64,000 bases of DNA from the IMG/VR virus record IMGVR_UViG_3300042558_003926, positions 225,652 through 289,651 of that record; one strand, 5' to 3'. Made by a program: the position numbers and the translations under genes. Shown piece by piece: positions 1-63,775 of this stretch. The notes beneath the pieces are model-generated. The model had not been told where the DNA came from. It worked only from the letters and a program-made list of their open reading frames with translations, and searched no databases. Position 1 is the stretch's first letter. The number at the start of each line of letters is the position of its first letter.

Positions 1-235
1 CACCATATCCAGGAACCTTGTAAACCTTACCTGTTAAATCTGAGGTGATTAAATCCTTAATATCCTTAGTGTATCTAGTTAGGACATCAGTTTGAGGTTT
101 AAGCATTCCTCTAGACTTTGCTTCCACTGCTTTACGAACAGAAGTTCCCTTCATTAACTTATTAGTTTCCAGATAATTTACAGCAGATTGCTCGGCTTGT
201 TGAGTAAAAGCTTCAAAAAGATTAATATATTTCAT
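1..235 (-). CDS. CTS-leader protein, partial (runs off window start)
   Basis: Read manually: MKYINLFEAFTQQAEQSAVNYLETNKLMKG..., open to position 1; AATATATAG motif at 258-266 upstream. Confidence 0.75.
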   Translation of the reverse strand, partial: MKYINLFEAFTQQAEQSAVNYLETNKLMKGTSVRKAVEAKSRGMLKPQTDVLTRYTKDIKDLITSDLTGKVYKVPGYG

Positions 236-271
236 TTTGATTGGATTTATATTTACCCTATATATTCAACC

Positions 272-1366
272 CTAGATTTGTTTTAATGCGAATCCTAAAT
301 CCGAAAAATCCCTCATACCTGTTCTTTTCAATATACCATCCTTAATATCTGGATGATTTTTAAGGTACTGTAGGTCCAACGGATTTTTTTGGAAATGACT
401 ATCTGGCAAAGCCGTTGCAATAAATTCCTTAAATTTATCATCATCCTTACTAAATGCCATATAATGCGAAATTTGATAGTGATGGTCTATATATGAGCCA
501 GGACCCTTATCCATTATCATAGGAAGTACCTCTATATCGAAAGGAGAAGCGTAAAAGTAATCACACTGGAAAGCAACTATTTTTCTTTCCCTATCGAAAT
601 ATCCAGCTAGAGAATTTAATGCAGGTGATTCTGACATGGTTCTTCTTTCATGGTTTACCGATAAAATTCTAAGAGGTTCCGAAACCTCTATAGTAGGAAA
701 TGTCATTAGATCTTTGATTCCTCCCAGAGAGTATAGTAGCATTTCTCCGCCAACTTTTTCGGGGAGAAATTCCAATGACTCCAGATCATTCAACCGAATG
801 ATCACAAATTTACCCTTCACTGTACCAAAATTTATAGATGCTAGTATATCTGGATCAGATGTTTGAGGATCCTGTGAGAATGTTCCCGAAATATCCACTG
901 CTTGACTTACTCTATTCCATTTCCATTTAGATTTAGTCCCCTTGTTTATCTCGATAATCTGATTAGCCGTCAAAGGACCAGTATTTTCATTTGGCTCATT
1001 CCTTTTTATTTCTCCGGAAAATCTATCAAGTAGATTAAGAAGCATATCATACAGGGTGAAATCACTCTGGTATCTTTTAATAAATCCAGAGGTTGCCGCT
1101 TTATCTCTTATATAACCGGATTTCTGTAAAACGATTCCGTCTGGGTACATATAAGAAATTGATGGATTATTGGTTTTTAACATGATGGTAGAGTTCTTGG
1201 CTTGAAGTGGGGTTGTGACTTCTACAAATCCGATATCCTCTAAAGACTTCCATATTCCCATTTCTTTCCAGTTAGAAGGCCAATGTTCTTTTTCTATATC
1301 AGATAGATTTGAATTCTCGTAGATATAACCAGAATTAAACTCCTTGAACCCCTTTATATTTTTCAT
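272..1366 (-). CDS. CTS-leader protein with degenerate LRR-like segment
   Basis: Starts MKNIKGFKEF; LESLEFLPEKVGGEM resembles the LRR unit; N-terminal domain resembles the 50507 protein. Confidence 0.8.
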   Translation of the reverse strand: MKNIKGFKEFNSGYIYENSNLSDIEKEHWPSNWKEMGIWKSLEDIGFVEVTTPLQAKNSTIMLKTNNPSISYMYPDGIVLQKSGYIRDKAATSGFIKRYQSDFTLYDMLLNLLDRFSGEIKRNEPNENTGPLTANQIIEINKGTKSKWKWNRVSQAVDISGTFSQDPQTSDPDILASINFGTVKGKFVIIRLNDLESLEFLPEKVGGEMLLYSLGGIKDLMTFPTIEVSEPLRILSVNHERRTMSESPALNSLAGYFDRERKIVAFQCDYFYASPFDIEVLPMIMDKGPGSYIDHHYQISHYMAFSKDDDKFKEFIATALPDSHFQKNPLDLQYLKNHPDIKDGILKRTGMRDFSDLGFALKQI

Positions 1367-1467
1367 ATATAAAATTAATTTTTTGCAATTTATTAAATCA
1401 TTACGATGGATAAAAAATATTAATATATTTCATTCCAATTATATTTACCGTGTATCCATAAATTTTT

Positions 1468-1698
1468 CTATTCCTCAGCAGAAACCTCAAATTGGTAGGG
1501 TTCCCCGAGGATGGGCTCTGTCCCCTCGTAATATTCGATATACCAAAACACTGGATTATCCAAACTTGCTTCCTTGTAGTCGACGTAATATTTAGTTACG
1601 TCTTCAGCTGTTTTAGGAAGTCCGTAGTAATCAGCACACGATTTCCTTGCATCTATAGCCTCTTGTTCAGTTGTATATTTATATCCATCAATAAACAT
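1468..1698 (-). CDS. small phage protein downstream of fibre-like gene
   Basis: 76-aa ORF overlapping the stop of 1688..3385. Confidence 0.75.
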   Translation of the reverse strand: MFIDGYKYTTEQEAIDARKSCADYYGLPKTAEDVTKYYVDYKEASLDNPVFWYIEYYEGTEPILGEPYQFEVSAEE

Positions 1699-3385
1699 CC
1701 CAGTAAGTATTTATGTTTGATTCTATTCCTGTTCTATTTGCACTCTGATCAGAATCCCAATATATGTATTCAGCATATCTACCCGAAGTTGTGCCCGATC
1801 CGGTTCGGCCAAAGTAAATAAAATTAGCACCAGTTGCTGGAATTTGGGTGGCTGTCGTAGCCGAAGCGCTACCGTTAACATAAGCAGTTTTTAAATCACT
1901 TGAATTTTTTTCCGAAGTAATTATAAACGCACCTACATTAACATCGAACCCATGGCTTACCAGAGAACTCATGTCGCTCCTCAATCTTCCCGTTGTAGCT
2001 TGCCAATATAAAGGTTGCTGACCCTGTATGCCGCCAATAGTACTATTACCAATTGAACCGATATTAATAGTATTCGAAGTTCTATTGACAACACCTACCG
2101 ATAAATATCGTGTATTTGGACTTATCCCAGATGCTAATGAATAACTATCATTTACCCAAGTAGTGGTTATTTTACCTGTATTTGGGTCTGTTATAATTGA
2201 ACCACCTGAAACAATTTGAGCTTGATCTGCTGTTGCTGCTTGTGTTGAATTATTCGAGTTTGTACTTTGGTCATACCAGGTTGTTACAAAACCACCACCT
2301 GCTGAAGCTAACGTTTTTTGATATGCCCTAAGATCTGCTGTTTTACTTAATTGAAAGCCCCAAACATAAGCACCAGAAGTACCGTCCCCCGCATAGGCTA
2401 ACTCTCCATTCGCAGCTCTTAAATAAATTCTAAAACAATTTGAAGTAGAAGTTTGCCCAGCAGTAATTTTAACTGAAAATCTATACCACCCGTTAGATTC
2501 TGCTGATATTACGGGCGAATTCGTAAAATTGCTACCCGATATAGTTCCATCTATTAAATTTATGACGCAAGCTTGTGTAGTTCCGGGTAGGAGTGATTCA
2601 AATCTTACGCTTGTTCTTTCTCCTTGTTTTAGATATAGAGATAAATTATAATCCGCTCCAATTACAGCAGTAACTCCTCCAGTTTTGTTCAATATATGGG
2701 TTGCATCTGATGTACCTTCGATAAGTTTATCACCGGATAGGGTATTGTCTGGAGCTGTTATAACATTTAAATAGGGAGGAGTCCCAGTTACATTTAAAGA
2801 GGCATACGAGTAGGTGGACGTCTGACTTATATCTTCCGAATATGTTGTTATATTATAACCTATGAAATCGAGTAAACCTACCGTGTCCAGATCATTGGAA
2901 GAAAATCCTATATCTTGTTCAGCGTCATCCAACGATCTTCTTACCCTTATGGCACTTCCAGAGTAAGCTGTTCTGAGTTTACGCAACGAATAAGCTAATG
3001 CTGCATTTGGGTATAGATCAAGTAAAGGTGTAATTAGGGGGAAAGAAGTCCAATATCCATTATTATTTAAATATGTCTTTGCGGAAGATCCGTCCGAAAA
3101 AGATTGGCCAAATATACTGTTTGTTAGATCAACAAAAGATTGCTCCGTTAATGATCCGCTTCTCCAAAATCCAACTGATGCTCCCAATCCATCTGGTGTG
3201 GGTTGATTCCCCCCGGGAACTGATGCCGCTATAACATATCCTAGATCCTCATCCGGACCATTCCACCAGCTAACCCCAGTAGATCCAAACCCAGATGATG
3301 GGTATCCGACAGCCAGGTTACCAACCTGTTCGGTTCCTGCAATAGAAGCTCCTGTGTTATATGCGAATGGTCTTGCTGTTGGCAT
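1688..3385 (-). CDS. virion surface/fibre protein (LamG/ConA-like domain with inserted head-spike-fibre-like domain)
   Basis: Motifs AYSLRKLRTAYSGSAIRVRR and FVTTWYDQS flank a segment with NGWYRFSV and YAGDGTSGAYVWGFQL; Ser/Thr/Gly-rich; GAATATATAAAG directly before ATG. Confidence 0.7.
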   Translation of the reverse strand: MPTARPFAYNTGASIAGTEQVGNLAVGYPSSGFGSTGVSWWNGPDEDLGYVIAASVPGGNQPTPDGLGASVGFWRSGSLTEQSFVDLTNSIFGQSFSDGSSAKTYLNNNGYWTSFPLITPLLDLYPNAALAYSLRKLRTAYSGSAIRVRRSLDDAEQDIGFSSNDLDTVGLLDFIGYNITTYSEDISQTSTYSYASLNVTGTPPYLNVITAPDNTLSGDKLIEGTSDATHILNKTGGVTAVIGADYNLSLYLKQGERTSVRFESLLPGTTQACVINLIDGTISGSNFTNSPVISAESNGWYRFSVKITAGQTSTSNCFRIYLRAANGELAYAGDGTSGAYVWGFQLSKTADLRAYQKTLASAGGGFVTTWYDQSTNSNNSTQAATADQAQIVSGGSIITDPNTGKITTTWVNDSYSLASGISPNTRYLSVGVVNRTSNTINIGSIGNSTIGGIQGQQPLYWQATTGRLRSDMSSLVSHGFDVNVGAFIITSEKNSSDLKTAYVNGSASATTATQIPATGANFIYFGRTGSGTTSGRYAEYIYWDSDQSANRTGIESNINTYWDVY

Positions 3386-5665: not shown

Positions 5666-6118
5666 TTATGCTACTTTAGTAAGTGTTGCATCATAGTCTC
5701 CCTCGACTCCTTTAATCTCTCCGGTCCCACTAAAAGCTATACTTGATGCTTTTGTCTTAACCTTGGATGCAAGAGTGTTTAGAGTTGCATCGTCCAATTT
5801 AAATACCTTATCTGTGTTGTCCTTAACGTAGATGTCTCCGGTCTCCTTGCTTTTCCAAACCACTTCAACAGCTATAGGTCCTTCATACCAAGTTACAAGG
5901 AGTTTTTTAACTTTGACATTTACCTTATAATAAAGTTCTGTGTTGTTATAGATGAAAACTATTCTACCGGTCAAATCCTTTGGCTTACCAGTTTTGGGAT
6001 CCTTACCCCCGTGTGTTCTGGCAGAAACTATCTCTACCCCCTTCCACTCTACTGATTCTAAAATTGGTTGATTTAAAGATTCGTTTACGAAATCTTGATA
6101 TCCCTTAATGTTTTCCAT
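5666..6118 (-). CDS. CTS-leader protein
   Basis: MENIKGYQDFVNES; GGAATATATAC upstream. Confidence 0.8.
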   Translation of the reverse strand: MENIKGYQDFVNESLNQPILESVEWKGVEIVSARTHGGKDPKTGKPKDLTGRIVFIYNNTELYYKVNVKVKKLLVTWYEGPIAVEVVWKSKETGDIYVKDNTDKVFKLDDATLNTLASKVKTKASSIAFSGTGEIKGVEGDYDATLTKVA

Positions 6119-8248: not shown

Positions 8249-8710
8249 TTATCCTATGTAAGTTTTGATGAATTCATCAACACCCATTAATTCTGTGTGA
8301 CCGTGATGGTCGATACAAAGCAATTTACCTTCAACTAGGTCAAATAAACGAGCTTCTTCGTAAACTTGGAAAGAATCACTACCGTTGTTCTCATTACCAA
8401 GTCTACCATCTTTAGCTATGTAGTAAGCATAATCCTCTGTGTTAGTGCTATTCGGCACCGCCTCAAATTCTCCATTCTCGTCATGAATTACATAACCCAT
8501 TCCTGTTACATCGACATCGAAGATTTTTAATTCGTCTTCAGTTCCAGGAAATTCGGCAGCAAGTCTGTCAATAGCACTTTGCAATTTCTCTTTCTGAACT
8601 TCGTCGATGATTCCTACTGCTGCATAAGCATCTCCCTGAAAGCAAGTAGCATATCTTCTACCGGATCTTTGTGTGGGACCGAAGTTCTCAAATAATCTAA
8701 GGTGTTTCAT
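8249..8710 (-). CDS. CTS-leader protein
   Basis: MKHLRLFENF; GAGATATATAAA upstream. Confidence 0.8.
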   Translation of the reverse strand: MKHLRLFENFGPTQRSGRRYATCFQGDAYAAVGIIDEVQKEKLQSAIDRLAAEFPGTEDELKIFDVDVTGMGYVIHDENGEFEAVPNSTNTEDYAYYIAKDGRLGNENNGSDSFQVYEEARLFDLVEGKLLCIDHHGHTELMGVDEFIKTYIG

Positions 8711-8772: not shown

Positions 8773-9447
8773 TTATATCATACCCTTAAATCCATGGTAA
8801 GCCCTTATCAATTCCAGTCTCTTTATTTCTTCCGGCCCCACCCACTCGAACTCTGGTTTGTAGAGTAGCATCTGATCCTCTAACGGGATCTCGCTCCAAA
8901 GTGACTCTACAGCCTCCTGATAGCTCATCTCATCTTCCATTTGGTAGAATATACTCCTGAGTGTATCCTCAGAAACCGGATTATTTACACATTTGAACAT
9001 CCCTCCGATTTTCTGAGGGGCACCTTCGAGAGAGGTGAGCTGGTTGTTGCTACAATTGAAATCGCTACCGATTTCCTGTGGTGCTCCCTCCAGTGAGGTA
9101 AGCTGGTTGTTGTTACAAAAGAAATCAAGGCCAACTCTCTTTGGTGATCCCACCAGCGAGGTGAGCTGATTGTCGTCACAATAGAAACCCTCAGCCTCCT
9201 GTGGTGCTCCCTCCAGTGAGGTGAGACGGTTGTCCTCGCATGAAAAATATGCTCTCACTACACCAAATCTAACTCCTTTAAAATCTGTCAGATCCTGTCC
9301 AGTGCAGCTAAAGCTCCCATCCACATCAACAAGTCCGGTATGAGGATTAATAGTCCATTTATCAGAGCACTCATCAAGCCACTCGATCTGCTCCGGGGTA
9401 AGCTCTACCGCACTCTCAAACATCTTATATGTCTTTAGATTCTTCAT
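8773..9447 (-). CDS. CTS-leader variable LRR protein (4 full repeats)
   Basis: MKNLKTYKMFES; xVGxxFxCxxNQLTSLxGAP units; conserved N- and C-caps ending GFKGMI. Confidence 0.9.
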   Translation of the reverse strand: MKNLKTYKMFESAVELTPEQIEWLDECSDKWTINPHTGLVDVDGSFSCTGQDLTDFKGVRFGVVRAYFSCEDNRLTSLEGAPQEAEGFYCDDNQLTSLVGSPKRVGLDFFCNNNQLTSLEGAPQEIGSDFNCSNNQLTSLEGAPQKIGGMFKCVNNPVSEDTLRSIFYQMEDEMSYQEAVESLWSEIPLEDQMLLYKPEFEWVGPEEIKRLELIRAYHGFKGMI

Positions 9448-9449: not shown

Positions 9450-10505
9450 CTATATCATACCCTTAAATCCTTGGTAAGCCTTTAACGCTTCCAGCTTCCT
9501 TCCCTCCTCTGGACTCACCCACTCGAACTCTGGTCTGTACAGCAGAGCCTGATCCTCTATAGGGATCTCATTCCAGAGTGATTCCATAGCCTGGATGTAA
9601 CTCTTCCCTTTCTCCATGGGGTATAATATTCTCCTGAGTGTCTCTTCAGAAACCGGATTGCTCTCGGAATAGAAAATCCCATTAATCTCCCGTGGTGCCC
9701 CATCCAGTGAGGTGAGCTGGTTGTTTTCGCAGAAGAAACCCCCTCTGACCCGCTGTGGTGCTCCCTCCAGTGAGGTGAGCTGGTTGTTCCTGCAAATGAA
9801 ATCCTCTCCAACCTCCTGTGGTGCTCCCTCTAGTGTGGTGAGCTGATTGTGGTCACAACTGAACCAAAATCCAACCTTCTGTGGTGCTCCCACCAGTGAG
9901 GTGAGCTGGTTGTTGCTACAATTGAAAGCCTGTCCAACACTCTGCGGTGCTCCCTCCAGAGAGGTGAGCTGGTTGTTGGTACACTTGAAACTCCCTCTGA
10001 CCCGCTGTGGTGCTCCCACCAGTGATGTGAGCCGGTTGTTCTCACAATAGAAATACCCAGCAATCTCCTGTGGTGCTCCCACCAGTGATGTGAGCCGGTT
10101 GTTCTGGCAATAGAAATACCCACCAACATCCTGTGGTGCTCCCTCCAGTGAGGTGAGCTGGTTGTTGCTACAATTGAAATCCTGCCCAACACTCTGTGGT
10201 GCTCCCACCAGTGAGGTGAGCTGGTTGTCGTGGCAATAGAAATCCCCTCCAACATCCTGTGGTGCTCCCTCCAGTGAGGTGAGCTGATTGTTCCGGCAAA
10301 TGAAATCCTCACTGACCACTCCAAACCTAACGTCTTTAAAATCTGTCAGATCCTGTTCAGAGCAATCGAAATCCCCATCCACATCAACCAGTCCGGTTTG
10401 TGGATTAATAGTCCATTCATCAGTGCACTTGTCCAACCACTCGATCTGCTCTGGTGTAAGCTCTACCGCACTCTCAAACATCTTATATGTCTTTAGATTC
10501 TTCAT
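9450..10505 (-). CDS. CTS-leader variable LRR protein (10 full repeats)
   Basis: 21-aa/63-nt periodicity; same caps. Confidence 0.9.
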   Translation of the reverse strand: MKNLKTYKMFESAVELTPEQIEWLDKCTDEWTINPQTGLVDVDGDFDCSEQDLTDFKDVRFGVVSEDFICRNNQLTSLEGAPQDVGGDFYCHDNQLTSLVGAPQSVGQDFNCSNNQLTSLEGAPQDVGGYFYCQNNRLTSLVGAPQEIAGYFYCENNRLTSLVGAPQRVRGSFKCTNNQLTSLEGAPQSVGQAFNCSNNQLTSLVGAPQKVGFWFSCDHNQLTTLEGAPQEVGEDFICRNNQLTSLEGAPQRVRGGFFCENNQLTSLDGAPREINGIFYSESNPVSEETLRRILYPMEKGKSYIQAMESLWNEIPIEDQALLYRPEFEWVSPEEGRKLEALKAYQGFKGMI

Positions 10506-10506: not shown

Positions 10507-11193
10507 TTATATCATACCTTTAAATCCTTGGTAAGCTCTTAACGCTTCCAGCTTCCTTCTCTCCTCTGGACTCACCCACTCGAACTCTGGTCTGTACAAC
10601 AGAGTCTGATCTTCTAACGGAATCTTGCTCCAGAGTGATTCCACAGCCTGCATGTGACTCTCCCCTTTCTTCATGAGGGAGAATATTCTCTTGAGTGTTT
10701 CATTAGAAACTGGGTTGCCGTAGCAATAGAAAATCAATCTCACCCGCTGTGGTGCTCCCACTAGAGAAGTGAGCTGGTTGTTGTCACATCTAAAATCCCC
10801 TTCAACCTCCCGTGGTGCACCCTCCAGTGAGGTGAGCTGATTGTTGTTACAATAGAAATCCCATCCAACCTTCTGTGGTGCTCCCTCCAGTGTGGTGAGC
10901 TGGTTGTCACTACAACTGAAACCCCCACCAACCCGCTGTGGTGCTCCCTCCAGTGTGGTGAGCTGGTTGCCGTAGCAATAGAAATACCCACTGACCACTC
11001 CAAACCTAACGTCTTTAAAATCTGGCAGATCCATACGAGAGCAGCCAAAATCCCCATCCACATCAACCAGTCCGGTTTGTGGATTGAGTGTCCAGGTACC
11101 ATCAATGCACTCGTCAAGCCACTCGATCTGCTCTGGTGTAAGTTCTCCTACACTCTCAAACAGTTGGCGATATGTCTTTAGATTCTTCATCAT
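10507..11193 (-). CDS. CTS-leader variable LRR protein (4 full repeats)
   Basis: Paralog; start may be the second ATG at 11190. Confidence 0.9.
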   Translation of the reverse strand: MMKNLKTYRQLFESVGELTPEQIEWLDECIDGTWTLNPQTGLVDVDGDFGCSRMDLPDFKDVRFGVVSGYFYCYGNQLTTLEGAPQRVGGGFSCSDNQLTTLEGAPQKVGWDFYCNNNQLTSLEGAPREVEGDFRCDNNQLTSLVGAPQRVRLIFYCYGNPVSNETLKRIFSLMKKGESHMQAVESLWSKIPLEDQTLLYRPEFEWVSPEERRKLEALRAYQGFKGMI

Positions 11194-11197: not shown

Positions 11198-12010
11198 CTA
11201 TATCATACCTTTAAATCCTTGGTAAGCTCTTAACGCTTCCAGTTTTCTTACCTCCTCTGGACTCACCCACTCGAACTCTGGTCTGTACAACAGAGCCTGA
11301 TCCTCTACTGGAATCTCGTTCCAGAGTGTCTCCACAGCCTGAATGTAACTCTCCCCTTTCTTCATGAGGGAGAATATGCTCTTAAGAGTCTCCACAGAAA
11401 CTGGGTTGTTCTCACAATAGAAATAATCCCGTCCGATCTCCAGTGTTGCTCCCTCCAATGAGGTGAGCTGGTTGTCCCCACAATAGAAATACCCATCCAC
11501 CTTCTGTGGTGCTCCCTCCAGTGTGGTGAGCTGATTGTTCTCACAATTGAACCTCCCTCCAACCCGCTGTGGTGCTCCCTTCAGTGAGGTGATCTGGTTG
11601 CCGTTACACTCGAAATACCCTCCAACCTTCTGTGGTGCTCCCTCCAGTGTGGTGAGCTGATTGTTGTTACAAAAGAAACCACTTCTGACCCGCTGTGGTG
11701 CTCCCACCAGTGAGGTGAGCTGGTTGTTGCTACAACTGAAATGCTCTCCAACCTCCTGTGGCGATCCCTCCAATGAGGTGAGCTGGTTGTTCCTACAATT
11801 GAAACTCCCACTCACCACTCCAAACTTAACGCCTTTAAAATCTGTCAGGTCCTGTCTAAAGCAATCGAAGTCTCCTTTCACATCAACCAGTCCTGTTCGT
11901 GGATTGATCTTCCAGGTACCATCAGTGAACTTGTCCAGCCACTCGATCTGCTCTGGTGTGAGCTCTTGTGTGTTCTCAAACATTTGGCGATATGTCTTTA
12001 GATTCTTCAT
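11198..12010 (-). CDS. CTS-leader variable LRR protein (6 full repeats)
   Basis: Paralog; TAA-ATG junction with upstream gene. Confidence 0.9.
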   Translation of the reverse strand: MKNLKTYRQMFENTQELTPEQIEWLDKFTDGTWKINPRTGLVDVKGDFDCFRQDLTDFKGVKFGVVSGSFNCRNNQLTSLEGSPQEVGEHFSCSNNQLTSLVGAPQRVRSGFFCNNNQLTTLEGAPQKVGGYFECNGNQITSLKGAPQRVGGRFNCENNQLTTLEGAPQKVDGYFYCGDNQLTSLEGATLEIGRDYFYCENNPVSVETLKSIFSLMKKGESYIQAVETLWNEIPVEDQALLYRPEFEWVSPEEVRKLEALRAYQGFKGMI

Positions 12011-41920: not shown

Positions 41921-42020
41921 GCTCTATATATTTACCCCGGCCGAAAATAATCACGGGTTAATTTTTTTTCCCGGGCTAGATGGATTATATTTACTTCATA
42001 ACCAATTAAAACAAAAAACC

Positions 42021-42910: not shown

Positions 42911-43020
42911 TCACATTGCAGCACATGCATTACACCGAGGGCTAGAAAAAATCTAGTCCTTTATTTTTTTTCCTGGACATGAATACTTATATTTACTTAT
43001 AACCAATTAAACAAATCATT

Positions 43021-46885: not shown

Positions 46886-47278
46886 ATGAAACATCTTAGA
46901 AGATTTAATGAGAGCGCAAACACAAACCTAGAGGAGATTACTCCAGGTAGATTTGTGTATCACTTGTCTGCACCAGTATACAGAGACCAGATAGAAAGAA
47001 TCGGGTTACTTCCTAAAAGAGGGGAACAGTGGTTAACCAATACTCCAATTGAGGGAGAAGCTATATTTGCAACTGATAGTGATAACGAGGAAGATTGGTA
47101 CGATTCCTCTTATGATGACGATGTTTATGAGATAGACACGGATAAAATTAGTAATAAGTGGTACGTGGATCCTAATTTCCAAGTTCAAGACTACTCCAAA
47201 CACATAGTTACCTTTGATAAAATACCTTCATCTGCAATCTCTCTAATACATAGAGGAACTGGGGATTCTAAATACTAG
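46886..47278 (+). CDS. CTS-leader ADP-ribosyltransferase-fold protein
   Basis: MKHLRRFNES; FVYHLS...IERIGLLP...AIFAT. Confidence 0.6.
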   Translation: MKHLRRFNESANTNLEEITPGRFVYHLSAPVYRDQIERIGLLPKRGEQWLTNTPIEGEAIFATDSDNEEDWYDSSYDDDVYEIDTDKISNKWYVDPNFQVQDYSKHIVTFDKIPSSAISLIHRGTGDSKY

Positions 47279-51765: not shown

Positions 51766-52277
51766 TGAAGCATCTAAAGCCATACGACGTATTTTCTGAT
51801 TTATCCCACATAGACGAGGCTATATCATGGTCTGATGTTAAATCAGCATATAAAAGAGCTAAACATGTGGCTATGAATGTTATTAGAGCTTTTAAACACG
51901 AGGGCAAAGAAACTGCTGATATGATGAGGGTTTTTAATTATCAGCTAAGAAAGAAATTAAATCTAGAAACTAGAAGAGATGCTCCGAGTCCAGAAGAAAT
52001 TACTAGCGCTCTCGAACAGCTAAAGGATATTCCAAAACTTGCTCCTTATGCGGTTATTCTACTTACATCCCCAATTCCATTTTCATCTACCATGTACACT
52101 GGAGCTGCTATCTACCTCAAGAAAGTGACCAGGGGATATCTTAACTTACTACCTGATTCGTTCTCTGATGTGTTTAAAGGAATAGAAGACAGCGAGGTTG
52201 AGATAGAAAGGGATAGAAAGGAAATTGAATTCAAAGAGGATCCGCAAGATCCAGCAAAGTGGATAGATGTTAAATAG
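51765..52277 (+). CDS. CTS-leader protein
   Basis: MKHLKPYDVF...IDEA. Confidence 0.75.
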   Translation: MKHLKPYDVFSDLSHIDEAISWSDVKSAYKRAKHVAMNVIRAFKHEGKETADMMRVFNYQLRKKLNLETRRDAPSPEEITSALEQLKDIPKLAPYAVILLTSPIPFSSTMYTGAAIYLKKVTRGYLNLLPDSFSDVFKGIEDSEVEIERDRKEIEFKEDPQDPAKWIDVK

Positions 52278-52279: not shown

Positions 52280-52591
52280 CTATCTGAACTTACCTGGATA
52301 AATCATTCTCCATTCGTGCCCAGCAGGTACATCACTTACTTTAACGCCAAAGATCTTTTTTTCCGGACATGGAGATTTTCCATCTATTAGAAATCCGTTA
52401 TTACAAGCCCATGTTTCAATATTTCTTGTATAGTGCTGACCGGGGGAATATGGAAAATTTACACCAGAGTTATTTTCTATGGAAGTTATTCTCCCTCCCA
52501 GAACGATAAGATTGATCTTTCTTCCAGATCTTGATGTCAGCTCAATCTCCCTTTCCTGGGAGAAGTTCTCGTATAATTCTATGTTTTCCAT
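52280..52591 (-). CDS. CTS-leader protein
   Basis: MENIELYENF; GATATATAG at 52598-52606. Confidence 0.75.
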   Translation of the reverse strand: MENIELYENFSQEREIELTSRSGRKINLIVLGGRITSIENNSGVNFPYSPGQHYTRNIETWACNNGFLIDGKSPCPEKKIFGVKVSDVPAGHEWRMIYPGKFR

Positions 52592-52631: not shown

Positions 52632-53528
52632 ATGAAAAACCTGGTCACATATAGGGTATTTGAAAACGAAGCAGAGCCGATCCGGAAGGTGTTTAATAGG
52701 GAACAGCTTTCTTGGTTAGATAAGTGTACGGAGGGATCTTGGAAGTATAATCCGGCAACGGGAAAAATAGACGTTAATGGATCTTTCGATTGTTCTAATC
52801 AAGGATTAACTGATTTTAAAGGTATCGAATTTGGAGACGTTAAGGAACAATTCAGATGCAATGGAAATAAACTGACCTCCTTAGATGGTTCTCCGGAAAG
52901 AGTAAAAGACTTCGTTTGCAGTAAAAACTTATTAAAGAATCTTATAGGTGGACCAAAAGAGGTTAATACCTATCACGCGGGTGGAAATGAATTAGTTAGT
53001 ATGGAAGGATCTCCCGCTAGAGTAAACGGTCCTATGTCGGTAAGAGACAACCTGCTGGAATCTTTAGTCGGTTCACCCGAATATATCGGAGGAGATTTTA
53101 GTTGTCCTGATAACAGACTAGAGACAATGGTGGGTGCACCTAGAAAAATAGAAGGGGATTTTAACTGTGCTGATAACTATCTAAAAGATTTAACTGGAAT
53201 CCCAAATGAAATTGGAGGGAGCATTAGCCTATACGGTAACAATATATCATCTCTCAAGGGAATAGATGATCTGGTATCACTTGGATACTTAAGGTACCAT
53301 TCATCGTGGTTTTCAGAAAATCCGTTGTCCAAAGATACCGCTGTTCTCATAGTGGATGAGATGAGCGAGAAAGATCTTGAATATGGTGAAGTTTTAAGAA
53401 AAGTATGGGAAGATATACCCGATGAGGACAAGGTTCTTCTTTATAAAGATCTACCCGGATTAACCGACGAAGAAGCTAAAGCTTATAGAGCTCTAGCAGG
53501 ATTTCTTGGTATGAGACACCTACTATGA
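52632..53528 (+). CDS. divergent CTS-leader LRR protein (about 7 repeats)
   Basis: MKNLVTYRVFEN; same N-cap and 20-21-aa units; GATATATAA at 52617. Confidence 0.85.
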   Translation: MKNLVTYRVFENEAEPIRKVFNREQLSWLDKCTEGSWKYNPATGKIDVNGSFDCSNQGLTDFKGIEFGDVKEQFRCNGNKLTSLDGSPERVKDFVCSKNLLKNLIGGPKEVNTYHAGGNELVSMEGSPARVNGPMSVRDNLLESLVGSPEYIGGDFSCPDNRLETMVGAPRKIEGDFNCADNYLKDLTGIPNEIGGSISLYGNNISSLKGIDDLVSLGYLRYHSSWFSENPLSKDTAVLIVDEMSEKDLEYGEVLRKVWEDIPDEDKVLLYKDLPGLTDEEAKAYRALAGFLGMRHLL

Positions 53529-55258: not shown

Positions 55259-55843
55259 ATGAAACACATCAGAACATTCGAATCGCTCTCCTACGGCAAA
55301 GAAAAAGGCCAAATAAGTGAGGGCTTGGGATATCATCTAGATAGGAATTTACCGCTAATGGAAAGTGTCTATCGTATAGAGTCAGAAGCTTGGCTGGATC
55401 TAGTAAACGAAGCTAGGATTCTATGGGAAAGAGGAGACATAGAACTGGAGGAGGATGATTTATTTCTGATAGGAACAGATGCAGGAAGAACCGGCATCTA
55501 TGAGGGAGAGGAAGTATTATTAGATGTTCCTTTTTATCTATGGGATGATATCGACGAAGCAGAGTACAGAGGTAGAAAGGTTGATCTAAATAAACCATTT
55601 AGAACTCCAGGAGGTCCTAGAAAATTTGCAGTTTACACCAAGAATGAATCAGGAAACATTGTAAAGGTTGGGTTTGGCCAGCCAGGAATGAGAGTAAATA
55701 ATGACGATCCAGCTAAAGCAAGATCATTCAGAAAGAGAATGAGATGTGATAATCCCGGACCTAGATGGAAAGCTAAATGGTGGTCTTGTAATGTTGCGAG
55801 ATATAGAAAACTATTAGGTATTAAATCTAGCAGACCGTGGTAA
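55259..55843 (+). CDS. CTS-leader protein with DUF6321-like C-terminal domain
   Basis: MKHIRTFES; KKFAVY...KVGFG...RSFRKRMRC...WWSC. Confidence 0.75.
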   Translation: MKHIRTFESLSYGKEKGQISEGLGYHLDRNLPLMESVYRIESEAWLDLVNEARILWERGDIELEEDDLFLIGTDAGRTGIYEGEEVLLDVPFYLWDDIDEAEYRGRKVDLNKPFRTPGGPRKFAVYTKNESGNIVKVGFGQPGMRVNNDDPAKARSFRKRMRCDNPGPRWKAKWWSCNVARYRKLLGIKSSRPW

Positions 55844-56133: not shown

Positions 56134-56343
56134 ATGGAAAACCTTAAAGAGTATAACGATTTTCTTTTTGAAAAAAGAGGGGTAAGCCCAGTTATTTACA
56201 ATGATTTAGAATTCTTCTTTAGCAGCGTGAAATATCCTGCTTACGAGGAGGCTAAAAAATTCATAGCTAAATCTCATGATGGTTGGGATCTTTCTAAAGA
56301 GGATTATGAAGAGGCTAAGAAAATGTTCAGAAAAGGAAATTAA
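56134..56343 (+). CDS. CTS-leader small protein
   Basis: MENLKEYNDFLFE; GATATATAAA upstream. Confidence 0.75.
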   Translation: MENLKEYNDFLFEKRGVSPVIYNDLEFFFSSVKYPAYEEAKKFIAKSHDGWDLSKEDYEEAKKMFRKGN

Positions 56344-56927
56344 TGAAACACGTTAGACTGTACGAGAATTTCGACCTGGATGCTTTTATGAAAGATCCTG
56401 AGTCTTATTTTCATGATGACAGCTCACCCGAGATAGTAGAGGGGGACTACGTTAACTCATATAGAGGGGTTGGTCAGGTTTTATCTATAGATAATGATTT
56501 TATTAGGGTACAGCTTATAGATGGACCAAAATCAATAGTTAAAGTTCCAAGAGAATTGGTAACCAAGATAGCAAAAGCCGATGCTATGCAAATAGCACAA
56601 TTACTAACAAACACAAGAAAAGATCTGGAGGAGATATCTTCGGATCTACAGGATTATCTAGATACAATGATTTCTACGGATGATGATGAAACCAAAGAGA
56701 TTATATCAGGGGATATAGAATCATCAGTAAACTACTTAGAAAGCATTTTAATAGATGTGATAGGATTACAGAAGAAAGACTCATATGCAACTTCATATCC
56801 TCAATATTCTCATCTGGTATCTATAATTGCTACTTTTGCTCATCTTATTCTGGAAACCACCGAAGATGACGAAATTCAAAAAAGGGTGGATACCATACTA
56901 GATAAGTTTTACGAAATTTCAAATTGA
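56343..56927 (+). CDS. acidic CTS-leader protein
   Basis: MKHVRLYENF. Confidence 0.75.
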   Translation: MKHVRLYENFDLDAFMKDPESYFHDDSSPEIVEGDYVNSYRGVGQVLSIDNDFIRVQLIDGPKSIVKVPRELVTKIAKADAMQIAQLLTNTRKDLEEISSDLQDYLDTMISTDDDETKEIISGDIESSVNYLESILIDVIGLQKKDSYATSYPQYSHLVSIIATFAHLILETTEDDEIQKRVDTILDKFYEISN

Positions 56928-61481: not shown

Positions 61482-62315
61482 ATGTTACAGATTAAATACG
61501 GACCAGAGATAGAGGATACTAGAAGATTCTTGGAGATATTATCCGAGCACAAAAAGGTAACCTTTATAACAACTTCTAGCAGAAGCCCATATGTTGAAAA
61601 ATTTGGGGAAAGTCCTAAATCTTCCCAGCTAGCCAGAAATCTAGCAGAGAATCTAGAGAGAAGAGGGGTTAAGGTAAACATCATAGATGCGACCAAATTA
61701 GAGATTAAAAACTGTCTAGGTTGTGTTAGCGAGGTCCATGGTAATAACTGTGGAGCAAAAGAATCAAATCTTAAAGACAAGGAAAAGAATCCTAATGGTA
61801 AGCTTAGATGCTGGGCAAGCCACGATTTCAAGGACGATGAACTTTGGAAGATATCTAAATCTATCTATGAAAGTCAGGCTGTTATTTTCTTTGGTTCCCA
61901 AAGATGGGGGAGCGTGAATGCAATGTATCAGAAGGTCATAGAAAGATTGGATTGGATCGAAAACATGCACACTTCCCTAGGAGAAGAGAACAGCGTAAAA
62001 GATATACAGGCGGGTCTGGTAATCATAGGACAAAACTGGAAAGTAGAAGAAAGCCTAGTTACTCAGAAAAAAGTACTTGAATTCTATGGGTTTAAAACTC
62101 CGGATTCCTTATTTATAGGATGGCAATATACCAGAGACTCAAATGACGAGACTCAGGAATCCTACAGAAATGCGGTAGATACATTCGAGCAAGCGTGGAA
62201 TATTAAATTGTTTAATTGGGAAAAACCAAAAGGAACAGAGCTCAGCATAGAAAAGTCTAATGAATCCCATTTCGTAACATTTAAGGACTTTCTCCATGAA
62301 ATAAAAAATCTATAA
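61482..62315 (+). CDS. flavodoxin-like FMN reductase / iron-sulfur flavoprotein-like protein
   Basis: ITTSSR...SKSSQLA, CLGC...C...C, IFFGSQRWGSV; GATATATAAG upstream. Confidence 0.7.
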   Translation: MLQIKYGPEIEDTRRFLEILSEHKKVTFITTSSRSPYVEKFGESPKSSQLARNLAENLERRGVKVNIIDATKLEIKNCLGCVSEVHGNNCGAKESNLKDKEKNPNGKLRCWASHDFKDDELWKISKSIYESQAVIFFGSQRWGSVNAMYQKVIERLDWIENMHTSLGEENSVKDIQAGLVIIGQNWKVEESLVTQKKVLEFYGFKTPDSLFIGWQYTRDSNDETQESYRNAVDTFEQAWNIKLFNWEKPKGTELSIEKSNESHFVTFKDFLHEIKNL

Positions 62316-62327
62316 ACATAAAAAAAA

Positions 62328-62355
62328 CCGAATCCCTAAAGATTCGGTTTTTAGT
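62328..62355. terminator. bidirectional terminator
   Basis: AAAAAACCGAATC-CCTAAA-GATTCGGTTTTT between convergent genes. Confidence 0.75.
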
Positions 62356-62371
62356 TTTATCTAATTCTTGA

Positions 62372-63775
62372 TTAAGCCATCTCGTATCCGAATTCGTCAG
62401 AATTGAAATCGAAATCCATGCTCCAATCTAAATCTTCAAATATGATATCTTCACCGAAGAAATCAGCGTATTCTTCAGACTCCCAGAAAGACTTACCTAC
62501 GTTGTACAAGTAATTAAATCCATCGCTAACTGCTTTAGAAGCCGAATTGTAAGCAGATGATACCGCATCTCCTGCACTCTTTAATAAAGATGCACCTGCT
62601 GCTAGTGCAGTTTTTGTTGCACTTACTGTAGCGTCCCATCCAGCTTTGATTGTTCTAGCAAAAGCCTGAGCACCATTCTTAACGTTTTTACCGATCCAGT
62701 CTAGTCCTCTTTTAACAAAAGCAGCTCCGTCTTTTGCAGCTTCTACTATACCTTTTACTGCGGAAGAAAAAACGGATTTAATACCTCTCCATGCTGCAAC
62801 AACTGCTCCAGTTAAAACATAAGCAGTAGTTTTTGCAGCAGCTTTAATACCGTCCAAAAATGCTGTGCATGCCTGAACTGAAGCCTTCATAACTTTTCCT
62901 GCTGATTCGGAAAACTTTGTCCATGCAGCATTAGACCATGCAGCAACTTTTTTATAAGCTGCTTTAGCCCCTTTAGCTGCCCAGTCCGTTACTGTAGCTA
63001 ATCCCTGAGCTACTGCCCCTACTGCAGTCATTGCTCCTTTAGCTACCCAAGCACCTGCCGATACAACACCAGATATAATTGCGTTAGCTGTCTCTGCTGC
63101 TAATACGAATACTCCAGTAACAGTGTAGATAAGAGCCTTTCCTACTGCGCTAGCTGCATTTTTCATCCATTCCCAGTTTGCTTTAAGAAGTCCCTTACCA
63201 TCAAGTGTTTTAACAGTTTGAGCTGCATCTTTTTTAGGATAGCAAATAACGTAAGTTTTATCGCCGTTTTTAGTAACTACTACTCTATCAAATACCAATA
63301 GCAATTTAGGATCTATTCCAGCTGCCTTAGCTTGTGCTGTCGTTTTTACGATAAACTTTTGTACGATGATCTGATCTTGTTTCTTAACGTCGGTTACATT
63401 ACCTTTTAGTGCCATCATCTTTCTTAAAGTCTGTACCCCGACTTTACCGTCGATCGTTAATTTATTTGCTTTTTGAAATTCTTTAACCTTAGCTTCAGTT
63501 GCAGGTCCAAAGATACCATCAGCCGGGTTAATACCTAAATACTTCTGTATCTCTACTACTCTTGCTCCTTTTTCACCCTTTAATATCGGCTTATAAGTAT
63601 TTATTTCACCTGCCTCGTTTGTTGCTCCAGCAGTTGCGAAAATCTCTGCAATCTCTTTCTTATTAGCTGTAGGGTTAGCAGGATTAAAAATTGAATTATC
63701 TTCGGCTTCATTTATAAAACCATAAGATTCATAAAGAGAATTGAATTCCCCGAATGACATTAATCTATTTTCCAT
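62372..63775 (-). CDS. CTS-leader peptidoglycan-binding protein with long Ala-rich amphipathic region
   Basis: RLMSFGEF...FINEAE; LKGEKGARVVEIQ...DGIFGPATEAKVKEFQ...DGKVG; tape-measure-like C-terminal half. Confidence 0.8.
   Translation of the reverse strand: MENRLMSFGEFNSLYESYGFINEAEDNSIFNPANPTANKKEIAEIFATAGATNEAGEINTYKPILKGEKGARVVEIQKYLGINPADGIFGPATEAKVKEFQKANKLTIDGKVGVQTLRKMMALKGNVTDVKKQDQIIVQKFIVKTTAQAKAAGIDPKLLLVFDRVVVTKNGDKTYVICYPKKDAAQTVKTLDGKGLLKANWEWMKNAASAVGKALIYTVTGVFVLAAETANAIISGVVSAGAWVAKGAMTAVGAVAQGLATVTDWAAKGAKAAYKKVAAWSNAAWTKFSESAGKVMKASVQACTAFLDGIKAAAKTTAYVLTGAVVAAWRGIKSVFSSAVKGIVEAAKDGAAFVKRGLDWIGKNVKNGAQAFARTIKAGWDATVSATKTALAAGASLLKSAGDAVSSAYNSASKAVSDGFNYLYNVGKSFWESEEYADFFGEDIIFEDLDWSMDFDFNSDEFGYEMA

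What the first reader, a model, noticed from the sequence alone, without database searches (positions are those of the whole stretch)
1..63775. About 32 unrelated proteins share a T4-like capsid-targeting leader: a large injected proteome
Seen: otherwise unrelated ORFs start with M-K/E-x-I/L/V-K/R-x-Y/F-x-x-F-(x-x)-E, e.g. MKHLRLFENF, MENIKGYQDFVNES, MKNLKTYKMFES, RVKSYDEFVNET, IIKSFTQFLNEN, MENLKEYNDFLFE. Early-promoter genes lack it. Known: T4 IPII/IPIII begin MKTYQEFIAE, a capsid-targeting sequence removed by gp21 protease after Glu. Inference: the leader is a portable packaging tag for cargo (LRRs, CHAP, SLT, ART-fold, HExxH, PG-binding), on a scale far above the three T4 internal proteins.
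Basis: partly seen in the sequence, partly recalled or inferred. Interest (0 to 1): 0.85.

Follow-up and report, generated by a model that had tools for sequence, protein, structure and literature searches.

The report
T4-type capsid-targeting leader on dozens of proteins
A 338-kb phage of Bacteroidota puts the same short N-terminal "address tag" that phage T4 uses to load proteins into its head onto at least 33 late proteins in this window, which points to an unusually large set of proteins packed in the capsid and probably delivered into the host with the DNA.

Summary
33 ORFs in the window start with M-[KE]-[NH]-[ILV]-[KR]-x-[FYW]-x-x-F-x-x-E. After the leader is removed they fall into 24 families with no detectable similarity, plus one 10-member LRR family. 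The motif sits at N-termini 27 times against 1.2 expected. It is conserved at the amino-acid level, not the nucleotide level.

Tagged genes lie behind a late-type box (RATATATA). None of the 16 genes behind the early-promoter cassette carries the tag.

A scoring matrix built only from these leaders ranks T4 ipII, ipIII and ipI as the top three of 157 T4 ORFs. Its conserved positions match the T4 CTS residues shown experimentally to drive targeting (4, 7) and cleavage (8, 10).

The contig that holds the window also encodes, about 185 kb away, a Gp23-family capsid protein. Next to it is a gp21-type (S77/S80) prohead protease fused to a scaffold of 14 repeats carrying Y-[LIV]-[AS]-E.

Verdict: this is a T4-type capsid-targeting propeptide used on a much larger scale than in T4. 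The principle is known; the scale and the lineage are new. Packaging, cleavage and injection are inferred, not shown.

The parts
1..235 (-). Tagged ORF MKYINLFEAF; its 3' end runs off the window start (218 aa in full in L130). Late box at 259-266.
272..1366 (-). Tagged ORF MKNIKGFKEF, 364 aa, a distant member of the LRR family.
5666..6118 (-). Tagged ORF MENIKGYQDFVNE|S, 150 aa, cargo unknown. Late box at 6140-6147.
8249..8710 (-). Tagged ORF MKHLRLFE|NF, 153 aa. Late box at 8732-8739.
8773..9447 (-). Tagged LRR paralogue MKNLKTYKMFE|S, last gene of the six-gene array.
9450..10505 (-). Tagged LRR paralogue, 351 aa, Pfam LRR_4.
10507..11190 (-). Tagged LRR paralogue (start taken at the second Met).
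11198..12010 (-). Tagged LRR paralogue.
12011..12757 (-). Tagged LRR paralogue.
12758..13630 (-). Tagged LRR paralogue, first gene of the array. Late box at 13636-13643.
14760..15554 (+). Tagged ORF MKHVKIFEEY followed directly by a DUF5661 domain. Late box at 14745-14752.
22684..23517 (-). Tagged CHAP peptidoglycan hydrolase MVEKRIKNFCDFVNE|A. Late box at 23539-23546. The leader is unstructured in the model.
23728..24576 (-). Tagged SLT lytic transglycosylase MTHRVKSYDEFVNE|T, second gene of a three-gene late unit.
24585..25274 (-). Tagged ORF MNSSIIKSFTQFLNE|N, 229 aa. Late box at 25295-25302.
30859..31260 (+). Weak candidate MNQVKVFEFF. It has a host-type TTATATTTG promoter instead of a late box and may be a false positive.
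33662..34063 (-). Tagged ORF MLNNIKSYGEEINE|A, 133 aa. Late box at 34084-34091. Sits inside the early region on the opposite strand.
39023..39607 (+). Weak candidate MSRNIIDFDNF, 194 aa. Late box at 38978-38985.
41657..41920 (-). Short-leader candidate MILTYSDFLKE, 87 aa, basic. Late box at 41925-41932.
42629..42910 (+). Tagged ORF MNANILEFDDFSNE|S, 93 aa. Late box at 42601-42608.
43785..44414 (+). Tagged ORF MKHIKGFGLFE|A, 209 aa, with an HExxH motif (no Pfam hit). Late box at 43773-43780.
44439..45992 (+). Tagged ORF MERIKLFE|AFEG, 517 aa, no known domain. Late box at 44426-44433.
46886..47278 (+). Tagged ORF MKHLRRFNE|S, 130 aa. Late box at 46874-46881.
47555..48298 (+). Tagged LRR paralogue (start corrected to the Met of MKNLKTY). 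Late box at 47532-47539.
48299..49045 (+). Tagged LRR paralogue.
50507..51142 (+). Tagged ORF MKNLKTYQQLFE|S, 211 aa, not an LRR protein. Late box at 50484-50491.
51145..51765 (+). Tagged ORF MKHLNNWKLFE|S, 206 aa, acidic.
51765..52277 (+). Tagged ORF MKHLKPYDVF, 170 aa.
52280..52591 (-). Tagged ORF MENIELYE|NF, 103 aa. Late box at 52599-52606.
52632..53528 (+). Tagged LRR-family member MKNLVTYRVFE|N. Late box at 52617-52624.
55259..55843 (+). Weaker candidate MKHIRTFESL, 194 aa. Late box at 55183-55190 (69 nt upstream).
56134..56343 (+). Tagged ORF MENLKEYNDFLFE, 69 aa. Late box at 56109-56116.
56343..56927 (+). Tagged ORF MKHVRLYE|NF, 194 aa.
62372..63775 (-). Tagged ORF MENRLMSFGEFNSLYE|S, 467 aa, with a PG_binding_1 domain. 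Late box at 63801-63808.
1688..3385 (-). Contrast: an untagged late gene (late box at 3391-3398) for a tail-like virion protein. It shows the tag is not a general feature of late genes.
27819..43011 (+). Contrast: the early region. It holds 19 copies of the cassette ...TTAtaTTTa...ATAACCAATTAAAAC, 17-21 nt before the ATG of small ORFs. None of those ORFs is tagged.

Best explanation
The leader is a T4-type capsid-targeting sequence (CTS). It is a 10-20-residue N-terminal propeptide fused onto otherwise unrelated late proteins.

Proposed mechanism, all steps inferred. The leader docks its protein onto the scaffolding core while the Gp23-type prohead assembles. The phage's gp21-type serine protease, which is fused to the scaffold, then cuts after the Glu that ends the leader ([LIVFM]-x-E|[SAGTN]). 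The mature protein stays inside the head with the DNA. By analogy with T4 IPI-III and Alt, it leaves with the DNA at infection.

Cargo. It includes cell-wall enzymes (CHAP, SLT, a PG-binding protein; Hydrolase_2 and GDPD just outside the window). These probably act during penetration. It also includes a diversifying family of LRR proteins and many proteins of unknown function, which are candidates for host takeover or counter-defence.

Shown here: the motif, its enrichment and its selection at the protein level; its match to the T4 CTS; its link to a late-type promoter box; its modular attachment to cargo; and the presence of the protease, scaffold and Gp23 genes in the same genome.
For: Motif and statistics.

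Match to T4. The T4 CTS scores 16.4 bits on the window-derived matrix. Nothing among 81 untagged N-termini, 14,580 internal 9-mers or 1,296 control N-termini reaches that. T4 ipII, ipIII and ipI are the top three of 157 T4 ORFs, with the next at 8.8 bits. Leader positions 0, +3, +4 and +6 correspond to T4 CTS residues 4, 7, 8 and 10, which are the experimentally defined targeting and processing determinants (PMC9026906; CTS sequence from PMC8442874).

Cleavage-type site at the end of the leader: 22 of 32 tagged against 5 of 81 untagged.

Late box against early cassette: 19/6 against 0/16, p = 7e-7. An untagged tail-like gene uses the same late box in the window, and an untagged GH19 endolysin does so in the left flank.

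The tag is an add-on. 11 CHAP orthologues at 49-63% identity in related 290-373-kb phages all keep I-[KY]-x-F-x-x-F-[ILV]-x-E. The 148-164-aa CHAP homologues elsewhere lack both leader and linker. In the AlphaFold model, leader residues 1-14 have pLDDT below 50 and lie outside the CHAP fold. DUF5661 carries this leader here, a different recurrent leader in the T4-like Flavobacterium phage immuto, and MKDFKSFLNA in the T4-like phage Cr30.

Same genome. IMG/VR contig 3300042558_003926 is 100% identical to window 2,761-58,295. At 33-55 kb it carries a portal-sized 905-aa protein. It also carries a 676-aa protein with a Peptidase_S77 domain (32 bits, cut-off 27) and an S80 domain (31 bits, cut-off 23.4). 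That protein has 14 repeats, each 14 residues long, containing [YH]-[LIV]-[AS]-E. Next comes a Gp23 capsid protein (143 bits). After that come minor proteins starting MKNIPSFKEF, MTLLKFKDWDNLNE|A and MLSFYDFMNE. In the 79%-identical sister-phage protease (L254), the same His, Ser and Asp columns are conserved as in T4 gp21.
Against: There is no virion proteome or N-terminal sequencing for this phage or any relative, so packaging, cleavage and ejection are unproven.

The tagged proteins are not uniformly basic as T4 IPs are: 17 of 33 have a pI below 6.

Only 11 of 26 representatives have Glu exactly at +6. In the others the nearest [LIVFM]-x-E site is shifted, and 3-4 have none in the first 30 residues.

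The scaffold repeats resemble the leader only modestly: 4 of 14 repeats score 5-7.4 bits.

A head holding 45 or more protein species is inferred only by analogy with SPN3US (more than 50 head proteins, PMC10052503 abstract).

The phage also encodes a ClpC-like unfoldase and ClpP, so another protease system is present.
Confidence: 0.8

Rival explanations
1. The tag does send proteins into the prohead, but many of them, for example the LRR array, act as extra core, scaffold or inner-body material. They would be degraded or stay in the head rather than act as injected effectors.
For: [quoted passage not shown] The head module itself holds leader-like minor proteins. Many tagged proteins are acidic, unlike DNA-binding IPs.
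Against: The cargo includes enzymes with clear targets in the host envelope (CHAP, SLT, PG-binding, GDPD, Hydrolase_2). These make little sense as scaffold. Most tagged proteins have a single predicted site at the end of the leader, not many sites along the chain as in the scaffold.
Confidence: 0.1
2. The leader is a docking peptide for some other late assembly, such as the tail, baseplate, fibres or capsid surface, and not for the head interior.
For: LRR proteins and cell-wall hydrolases are often tail-associated in other phages (general knowledge). The tag goes with late expression.
Against: The one clear tail-like protein in the window lacks the tag. The motif matches the T4 signal for the head interior at the residues that matter functionally. 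It ends in the cleavage-type motif of a prohead protease that acts inside the head.
Confidence: 0.05
3. The leader is a recognition tag (degron or unfolding signal) for the phage's own ClpC-like unfoldase and ClpP. It would time the removal or activation of late proteins in the cytoplasm.
For: The flanks encode a ClpC-like AAA+ protein and a ClpP.
Against: There is no known Clp degron of this form (general knowledge). This reading does not explain the specific match to the T4 IP leaders. It does not explain why related phages attach the tag to orthologues next to the head genes, or why a [LIV]-x-E site ends the leader.
Confidence: 0.03
4. The shared start is an RNA or translation feature of short-leader late mRNAs, or a remnant of common descent with no function of its own.
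For: The late box lies only 4-25 nt before most start codons, so the first codons could affect initiation. MK starts are common in bacteria (general knowledge).
Against: Synonymous codons are mixed at every conserved position. Six late genes lack the tag. The hydrophobic pattern is kept in orthologues whose leader residues otherwise differ. The cargo domains have leaderless homologues. 24 families show no similarity beyond the leader.
Confidence: 0.02

Closest known systems
T4 internal proteins IPI, IPII, IPIII and their capsid-targeting sequence MKTYQEFIAE (Mullaney & Black 1996, as cited in PMC8442874, PMC9026906 and PMC3012670)
   Same: It sits at the extreme N-terminus and has the same core, K-x-[YF]-x-[ED]-F-[ILV]-x-E. 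The aromatic residues fall at the positions needed for targeting, and the hydrophobic-x-Glu falls at the positions needed for cleavage. It is attached to unrelated proteins. It is encoded together with a Gp23 capsid and a gp21-family protease. The window-derived matrix recovers exactly these three T4 proteins.
   Different: The leader here usually has three more residues at the front (M-[KE]-[NH]-[ILV]). It is found on 33 ORFs (24 families) in 64 kb and about 50 in the part of the genome examined, against three IPs in T4. The cargo is mostly not basic. The host is Bacteroidota, not Enterobacteria. The protease is fused to its scaffold.
T4 Alt, gp24, gp67 and gp68, and the variable IP loci of T-even phages (Repoila et al. 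1994, as cited in PMC9026906)
   Same: The idea that a short propeptide lets T4-like phages load varying proteins, including an enzyme that modifies the host (Alt), is already stated in the T4 literature.
   Different: Those cases involve a handful of proteins per phage. Here there are arrays, paralogue expansion (10 LRR genes) and several cell-wall enzymes.
Ejection and inner-body proteins of the giant phages phiKZ and SPN3US with the S80 protease (PMC5694885, PMC10052503)
   Same: Large heads hold tens of protein species. The protease cuts after Glu in a short motif. N-terminal propeptides are thought to target proteins into the prohead. The protease here also passes the S80 threshold.
   Different: Their propeptides are mostly over 100 residues and share no common leader. 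Here the leader is 10-20 residues and stereotyped. The capsid protein here is a clear Gp23 family member.
The N-terminal packaging signal of phage P1 DarB (PMC9024508)
   Same: An N-terminal 30 residues are enough to send a reporter into the capsid.
Recurrent leaders in Flavobacterium phage immuto (T4-like head genes; NC_055915)
   Same: Several unrelated proteins share an N-terminal helix-like leader ending in Glu (MKKSQL..IIKE five times, MENxFDLKKFLVENKLT four times). One of them is a small protein between the portal and protease genes. The DUF5661 cargo is shared with the window.
   Different: The leader sequences differ, and the window matrix does not detect them. To my knowledge they are not described in the literature.

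Membership tests
T4-type capsid-targeting sequence (CTS) propeptide | Short leader (10-20 residues) at the extreme N-terminus | tested here: met
   The motif starts at residues 1-7 in all 33 ORFs: 27 N-terminal hits against 1.18 expected.
T4-type capsid-targeting sequence (CTS) propeptide | Aromatic residues at CTS positions 4 and 7 (targeting), and a hydrophobic residue at 8 with Glu at 10 (processing) | tested here: met
   Anchor F, Y or W in 26 of 26 (by construction). F at +3 in 20 of 26. Glu at +6 in 11 of 26. A [LIVFM]-x-E|[SAGTN] site at residues 7-19 in 22 of 32. The T4 CTS scores 16.4 bits on the matrix, and the T4 IPs rank 1-3 of 157. The determinants are taken from PMC9026906.
T4-type capsid-targeting sequence (CTS) propeptide | One leader on otherwise unrelated proteins of the same phage | tested here: met
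   24 families after trimming the leader. Pfam finds LRR_4, DUF5661, CHAP, SLT and PG_binding_1.
T4-type capsid-targeting sequence (CTS) propeptide | A gp21-family prohead protease that cuts after Glu, encoded in the same genome | tested here: met
   The gene is present on the contig that is 100% identical to the window. Peptidase_S77 scores 32-33 bits against a cut-off of 27, and the protein is 29% identical to T4 gp21. The His/Ser/Asp columns were checked in the 79%-identical sister-phage protease. Its cleavage specificity was not tested.
T4-type capsid-targeting sequence (CTS) propeptide | A Gp23-type shell assembled around a scaffolding core | tested here: met
   A Gp23 capsid gene (143 bits) lies next to the protease. 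The protease carries a repeat domain of 14 units of 14 residues that looks like a scaffold. Assembly itself was not tested.
T4-type capsid-targeting sequence (CTS) propeptide | Expressed late, together with the head genes | tested here: inconclusive
   The same RATATATA box precedes the tagged units, the tail-like gene, the portal-sized gene and the protease gene. This is a promoter motif only; there are no transcript data.
T4-type capsid-targeting sequence (CTS) propeptide | Protein found inside the head, leader removed, protein delivered into the host | not testable with these tools
   This needs virion proteomics with N-terminal mapping and infection assays.
phiKZ/SPN3US-type ejection proteins | Long propeptides (mostly over 100 residues) without a shared leader, and an S80 protease | tested here: not met
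   The leaders here are 10-20 residues and stereotyped. The protease does pass the S80 threshold as well as S77. The propeptide lengths come from PMC5694885.
Sec or lipoprotein signal peptide | A hydrophobic core of about 10 or more residues after a short basic start | tested here: not met
   Read directly from the sequences: the leader alternates charged and aromatic residues and has no hydrophobic run. True lipoprotein signals are seen on other, untagged ORFs such as 7414-8094. No signal-peptide predictor was run.

The most novel reading that the evidence does not exclude
The T4 CTS is an ancient address code shared across the Gp23/S77 phage superfamily, from coliphage T4 to 300-430-kb phages of Bacteroidota. 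These huge phages would use it to load an arsenal of 50 or more different proteins into the head and fire them into the cell with the DNA: wall-cutting enzymes, a rapidly diversifying LRR family and many unknowns. That would be an effector repertoire comparable in size to those of bacterial secretion systems. The leader may work by mimicking one unit of the scaffold's own 14-residue repeat.
Probability: 0.45. Interest if true: 0.85.

Novelty: new variant of a known kind. Interest (0 to 1): 0.7.

Why it matters
What is known. The T4 literature already proposes that the CTS lets T4-like phages load varying proteins into the head. That view rests on a few proteins in coliphages.

What this adds. 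The same code appears here in a distant lineage of huge phages whose capsid protein is nearest to the Lak megaphages. It sits on 24 unrelated protein families within 64 kb.

What follows if it works as in T4:
1. The leader becomes a sequence-only way to read off the packaged, and probably injected, proteome of uncultured huge phages. About 50 proteins of unknown function would then have a place and time of action.
2. It gives a testable explanation for part of the extra coding capacity of huge phages.
3. It suggests that the tandem LRR genes are an evolving set of delivered proteins.
4. It offers a natural tag for loading foreign proteins into phages of Bacteroidota, as the T4 CTS does for E. 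coli.

The co-linear protease-scaffold fusion, with 14 repeats carrying the same aromatic-[LIV]-x-Glu core, also gives a concrete hypothesis for how a CTS binds the core.

Tried and rejected
No relatives among deposited phages. Megablast of 20 kb against the phage records found nothing. tblastn of the 517-aa tagged protein also found nothing.

A search pattern that was too loose. Late box plus MK[NH] start, searched in IMG/VR, gave mostly chance hits in AT-rich contigs. I later used those hits as a control set.

Walking the contig. I used all 12 exact-protein look-ups and covered about 150.6-328 kb of the 337.7-kb contig. No head genes turned up. What did turn up was metabolic genes, glycosyltransferases, ClpC/ClpP, an untagged GH19 endolysin, a T9SS-tailed protein and a 303-aa Gp23-like paralogue.

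ClpP as the prohead protease. It hits 'head maturation protease' PHROGs at 1e-32. I set it aside because it lies among non-structural genes, a ClpC-like partner is encoded, and the true S77 gene was found later.

Finding the phage's own capsid or protease gene through homologue lists. This failed because hundreds of closer relatives fill the capped lists. A two-motif DNA pattern for the protease finally hit the phage's own contig.

Synteny with sister phages gave no guide to where the head module lay.

The huge phage LR756500 has the same protease-capsid gene pair but few such leaders in the 41 kb read.

ART-fold for 46886-47278: no Pfam or PDB match, only weak Atlas leads.

Scaffold repeats scored with the leader matrix give only a modest signal.

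Full report
WHAT THE WINDOW IS

The window is part of a huge phage genome.
- Exact copies of its proteins lie on metagenomic contigs of 238-338 kb. On JGI contig Ga0453753_0000001 (337,724 bp) the window spans about 226.5-290.5 kb.
- No tRNA genes are present in the window, and there is no near match among deposited phages.
- A Bacteroidota host is likely. The early promoters look like the Bacteroidota -7 element TAnnTTTG. Lipoprotein-type signals occur on several ORFs. A flanking gene carries a T9SS Por_Secre_tail domain.

THE OBSERVATION

- 33 ORFs begin with a leader of the form M-[KE]-[NH]-[ILV]-[KR]-x-[FYW]-x-x-F-x-[NS]-E.
- A strict pattern hits the first 8 residues of 27 of 113 called genes. 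The rate of the same pattern inside proteins predicts 1.18.
- With the leader trimmed, BLASTP leaves 24 families. 23 are singletons, and one has 10 members built from 22-residue leucine-rich repeats.
- Pfam finds LRR_4, DUF5661, CHAP, SLT and PG_binding_1 behind the leader. One tagged protein has a bare HExxH motif. The 'ART-fold' is not confirmed.
- At the conserved positions the codons are mixed: TTT and TTC are equal at +3, and nine codons are used for I/L/V at -3. Selection therefore acts on the peptide, not the RNA.

REGULATION

- A box RATATATA occurs 31 times against 8.5 expected. 21 copies lie just upstream of tagged transcription units, mostly 4-25 nt before the ATG.
- Most tagged genes without their own box follow a tagged gene in the same direction with almost no gap. 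Exceptions are 272-1366 and 30859.
- The same box precedes an untagged tail-like protein at 1688-3385. In the left flank it precedes an untagged GH19 endolysin. On the same contig it precedes the portal-sized gene and the protease gene. I read it as the late promoter. This is an inference from motif and company; there are no transcript data.
- A different, very regular cassette marks 19 small plus-strand ORFs between 27.8 and 43.0 kb. It has a T-run, then cTTAtaTTTa, then ATAACCAATTAAAAC 17-21 nt before the ATG. ACCAATTAAA occurs 20 times against 0.35 expected.
- None of the 16 called genes behind this cassette is tagged, against 19 of 25 behind the late box (p = 7e-7).
- Sugar-modifying enzymes, a RecA-like ATPase and the sigma factor are also untagged.

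IS IT THE T4 SIGNAL?

- T4 IPII and IPIII begin MKTYQEFIAE and IPI begins MKTFKEF. I read these from the T4 record and from PMC8442874.
- I built a position matrix from 26 leaders of this window, covering positions -2 to +6. On it the T4 peptide KTYQEFIAE scores 16.4 bits.
  - The window's own leaders score a median of 8.1 bits in leave-one-out.
  - The best of 81 untagged N-termini scores 7.5.
  - None of 14,580 internal 9-mers or 1,296 N-termini from unrelated viral loci reaches 16.4.
- Run over 157 ORFs of T4 (50-150 kb), the matrix ranks ipII, ipIII and ipI first, second and third. The next ORF scores 8.8 bits.
- Amber-suppression work on IPIII placed targeting mainly at residues 4 and 7 and processing at residues 8 and 10 (PMC9026906). 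Those are exactly the leader's aromatic anchor, its Phe at +3, its I/L/V at +4 and its Glu at +6.
- A site of the form [LIVFM]-x-E followed by S/A/G/T/N closes the leader in 22 of 32 tagged proteins and in 5 of 81 untagged ones.

THE TAG IS AN ADD-ON

- The CHAP protein has 11 orthologues at 49-63% identity in related phage contigs of 290-373 kb. All keep I-[KY]-x-F-x-x-F-[ILV]-x-E although the other leader residues differ. More distant CHAP homologues of 148-164 aa start right at the catalytic domain.
- In an AlphaFold model, residues 1-14 have pLDDT below 50 and lie outside the well-folded CHAP domain.
- The DUF5661 domain follows this leader here. In the T4-like Flavobacterium phage immuto it follows a different recurrent leader (MKKSQLRQIIKEAL). 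In the T4-like Caulobacter phage Cr30 it follows MKDFKSFLNA. A neighbouring gene in a T4-like cyanophage starts MKSFNQFLSES.

THE MACHINERY

- Walking outward with all 12 exact-protein look-ups covered about 150.6-328 kb of the contig and found no head genes.
- Relatives found through the LRR and CHAP proteins did carry T4-like portal, protease and capsid genes. In one relative the head genes lie directly upstream of the CHAP orthologue.
- A DNA pattern joining two conserved protease motifs then hit IMG/VR contig 3300042558_003926. That contig is 100.000% identical to the window over positions 2,761-58,295.
- At 33-55 kb of that contig lie, in order:
  - a 905-aa portal-sized protein;
  - a 676-aa protein whose first ~175 residues pass the Pfam thresholds for Peptidase_S77 (the T4 gp21 family) and S80. 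It is 29% identical to T4 gp21 and 35% to the immuto protease;
  - a 579-aa capsid protein of the Gp23 family (143 bits);
  - minor proteins starting MKNIPSFKEF (from an internal Met), MTLLKFKDWDNLNE|A and MLSFYDFMNE.
- The His, Ser and Asp columns shared with T4 gp21 are conserved in the 79%-identical sister-phage protease.
- The remainder of the protease protein holds 14 repeats with a period of exactly 14 residues, each carrying [YH]-[LIV]-[AS]-E followed by N/K/S. This looks like a built-in scaffold studded with cleavage-type sites.
- The repeat (Y-S-E-Y-L-A-E-N) has the same register as the T4 CTS core (Y-Q-E-F-I-A-E-A). With the leader matrix, however, only 4 of the 14 repeats reach 5-7.4 bits. 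The idea that the leader mimics a scaffold unit is a hypothesis, not a result.
- The capsid protein's own N-terminus contains S-L-N-E|S-A-G in the sister phages, in line with removal of a propeptide as in T4 gp23.

SCALE

- Outside the window, a matrix/regex scan of the other 182 genes I could read flagged 10 candidates, and reading N-termini by eye added more, for a rough total of about 15 tagged genes. They include a GDPD enzyme (MRIILEFNEFILE|S). They also include a Hydrolase_2 cell-wall hydrolase and a 60-aa lysine-rich protein that starts MILKFQEFITE|S, which closely resembles a T4 IP. The head module adds 3-4 more.
- The window is therefore a hot spot. The total for the roughly 60% of the genome I read is about 50.
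- The pattern's rate is 1.8% of genes in unrelated viral loci and about 9% in loci of related phages.

HOW IT MOST LIKELY WORKS

Inferred from T4 (PMC5694885, PMC9026906, PMC3012670):
1. Late in infection the tagged proteins bind the scaffolding core through the leader.
2. The shell closes around them.
3. The scaffold-borne protease removes the leader at the terminal Glu.
4. The mature proteins remain in the head and leave with the DNA.

The contrast between the untagged GH19 endolysin and the tagged CHAP, SLT, Hydrolase_2, GDPD and PG-binding proteins fits a split between lysis from within and wall penetration from without. This too is inference.

WHAT IS KNOWN AND WHAT IS NEW

- Known: the CTS and its portability have been known since 1996. 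T4 reviews already suggest it lets T4-like phages package varying proteins. Giant phiKZ-like phages package tens of proteins, but through long, dissimilar propeptides.
- Searches of the paper library for a CTS in cyanophages, jumbo phages or Bacteroidota phages returned only the T4, P1 and SPN3US literature.
- New here: the same code is conserved in a distant clade of huge phages whose capsid protein is nearest to LR756500 and the Lak megaphages. The number and variety of tagged proteins are far larger than in T4. The tagged LRR family has expanded. The protease is fused to its scaffold.
- I file this as a new variant of a known kind.

LIMITS

- Nothing here shows that any tagged protein is in a virion, is cleaved or is injected.
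- Three or four of the 33 are weak calls. 30859 sits behind a host-type promoter.
- My gene calls are simple longest-ORF calls.
- The leader pattern and matrix were derived from the same window in which they were counted. The T4 test and the counts in related and unrelated loci are the independent checks.

Noticed in passing
window 27819-43011 (+), plus one copy at 23685-23694 (-): A cassette of about 60 nt repeated 20 times. It has a T-run with a GC-rich stem remnant, then a box like cTTAtaTTTa (resembling the Bacteroidota -7 element), then the invariant ATAACCAATTAAAAC 17-21 nt before the ATG of a small ORF. It probably combines a terminator, an early promoter and a conserved 5' UTR. The role of the invariant UTR is unknown.
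   Followed up: partly
window, 31 sites listed (e.g. 14745-14752, 43773-43780, 52599-52606 and 52617-52624 back to back): The late-type box RATATATA lies only 4-25 nt before most start codons. Late mRNAs would then have almost no 5' leader. It recalls the T4 late promoter TATAAATA but is a different word.
   Followed up: partly
window 8000-16000: G+C is 0.46-0.48 over the LRR array, against 0.36-0.40 elsewhere. Paralogues within the array are about 80% identical at the DNA level, and two public assemblies end in or near the window.
   Followed up: partly
window 49074-50476 and 56971-62315; L129, L131 and L468 to the right of the window: Large sets of sugar-modifying genes: GT2, a DegT aminotransferase, an FtsJ-like methyltransferase, a hexapeptide acyltransferase and epimerases. 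They include more than 15 glycosyltransferases, some of families common in eukaryotes (GT7, GT10, GT11, GT17, Galactosyl_T). The target (DNA, virion or host surface) is unknown.
   Followed up: no
window 54137-55039 (-): A sigma-70-family factor (regions 1.2 and 2; PHROG 'RNA polymerase sigma factor', 4e-48), with a RATATATA box 103 nt upstream. It may be the factor that reads one of the two promoter classes.
   Followed up: no
L129:14100-16329 and L130:1381-2052 (flanks of the window): The phage encodes a ClpC-like double-AAA+ unfoldase with a UVR motif, ribosomal protein S21 right after it, and a ClpP about 17 kb left of the window.
   Followed up: partly
L137:15007-17816 (left flank): An untagged GH19 + PG_binding_1 endolysin behind a late box. 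It is followed by a 641-aa protein with a signal peptide and a T9SS Por_Secre_tail sorting domain, so a phage protein appears to be sent through the host's type IX secretion system.
   Followed up: no
L160:2588-3499 (left flank): A 303-aa protein that matches only the C-terminal half of Gp23 capsid proteins (weak Pfam Gp23 hit; aligns to immuto gp23 residues 311-484). It sits among metabolic genes, far from the real capsid gene. Orthologues exist in a few relatives.
   Followed up: partly
L581:10001-12028 (same contig as the window, about 43-45 kb): The prohead protease is fused to a domain of 14 repeats of 14 residues each (consensus x-I-x-Y-S-[EK]-Y-[LV]-A-E-N-[LV]-D-[KN]) and a conserved C-terminal region. 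The fusion is conserved in more than 200 IMG/VR contigs.
   Followed up: partly
L133 (Flavobacterium phage immuto, NC_055915, 93-133 kb): This T4-like phage has two other recurrent N-terminal leaders on unrelated proteins: MKKSQL..IIKE five times and MENxFDLKKFLVENKLT four times. Leader families may be lineage-specific versions of the same device.
   Followed up: partly
window 36000-37092 and 32147-32664: Pairs of overlapping ORFs in different frames (36000-36362 with 36235-37092; 32147-32440 with 32365-32664). They could be frameshifted or mis-called genes. I did not examine them.
   Followed up: no
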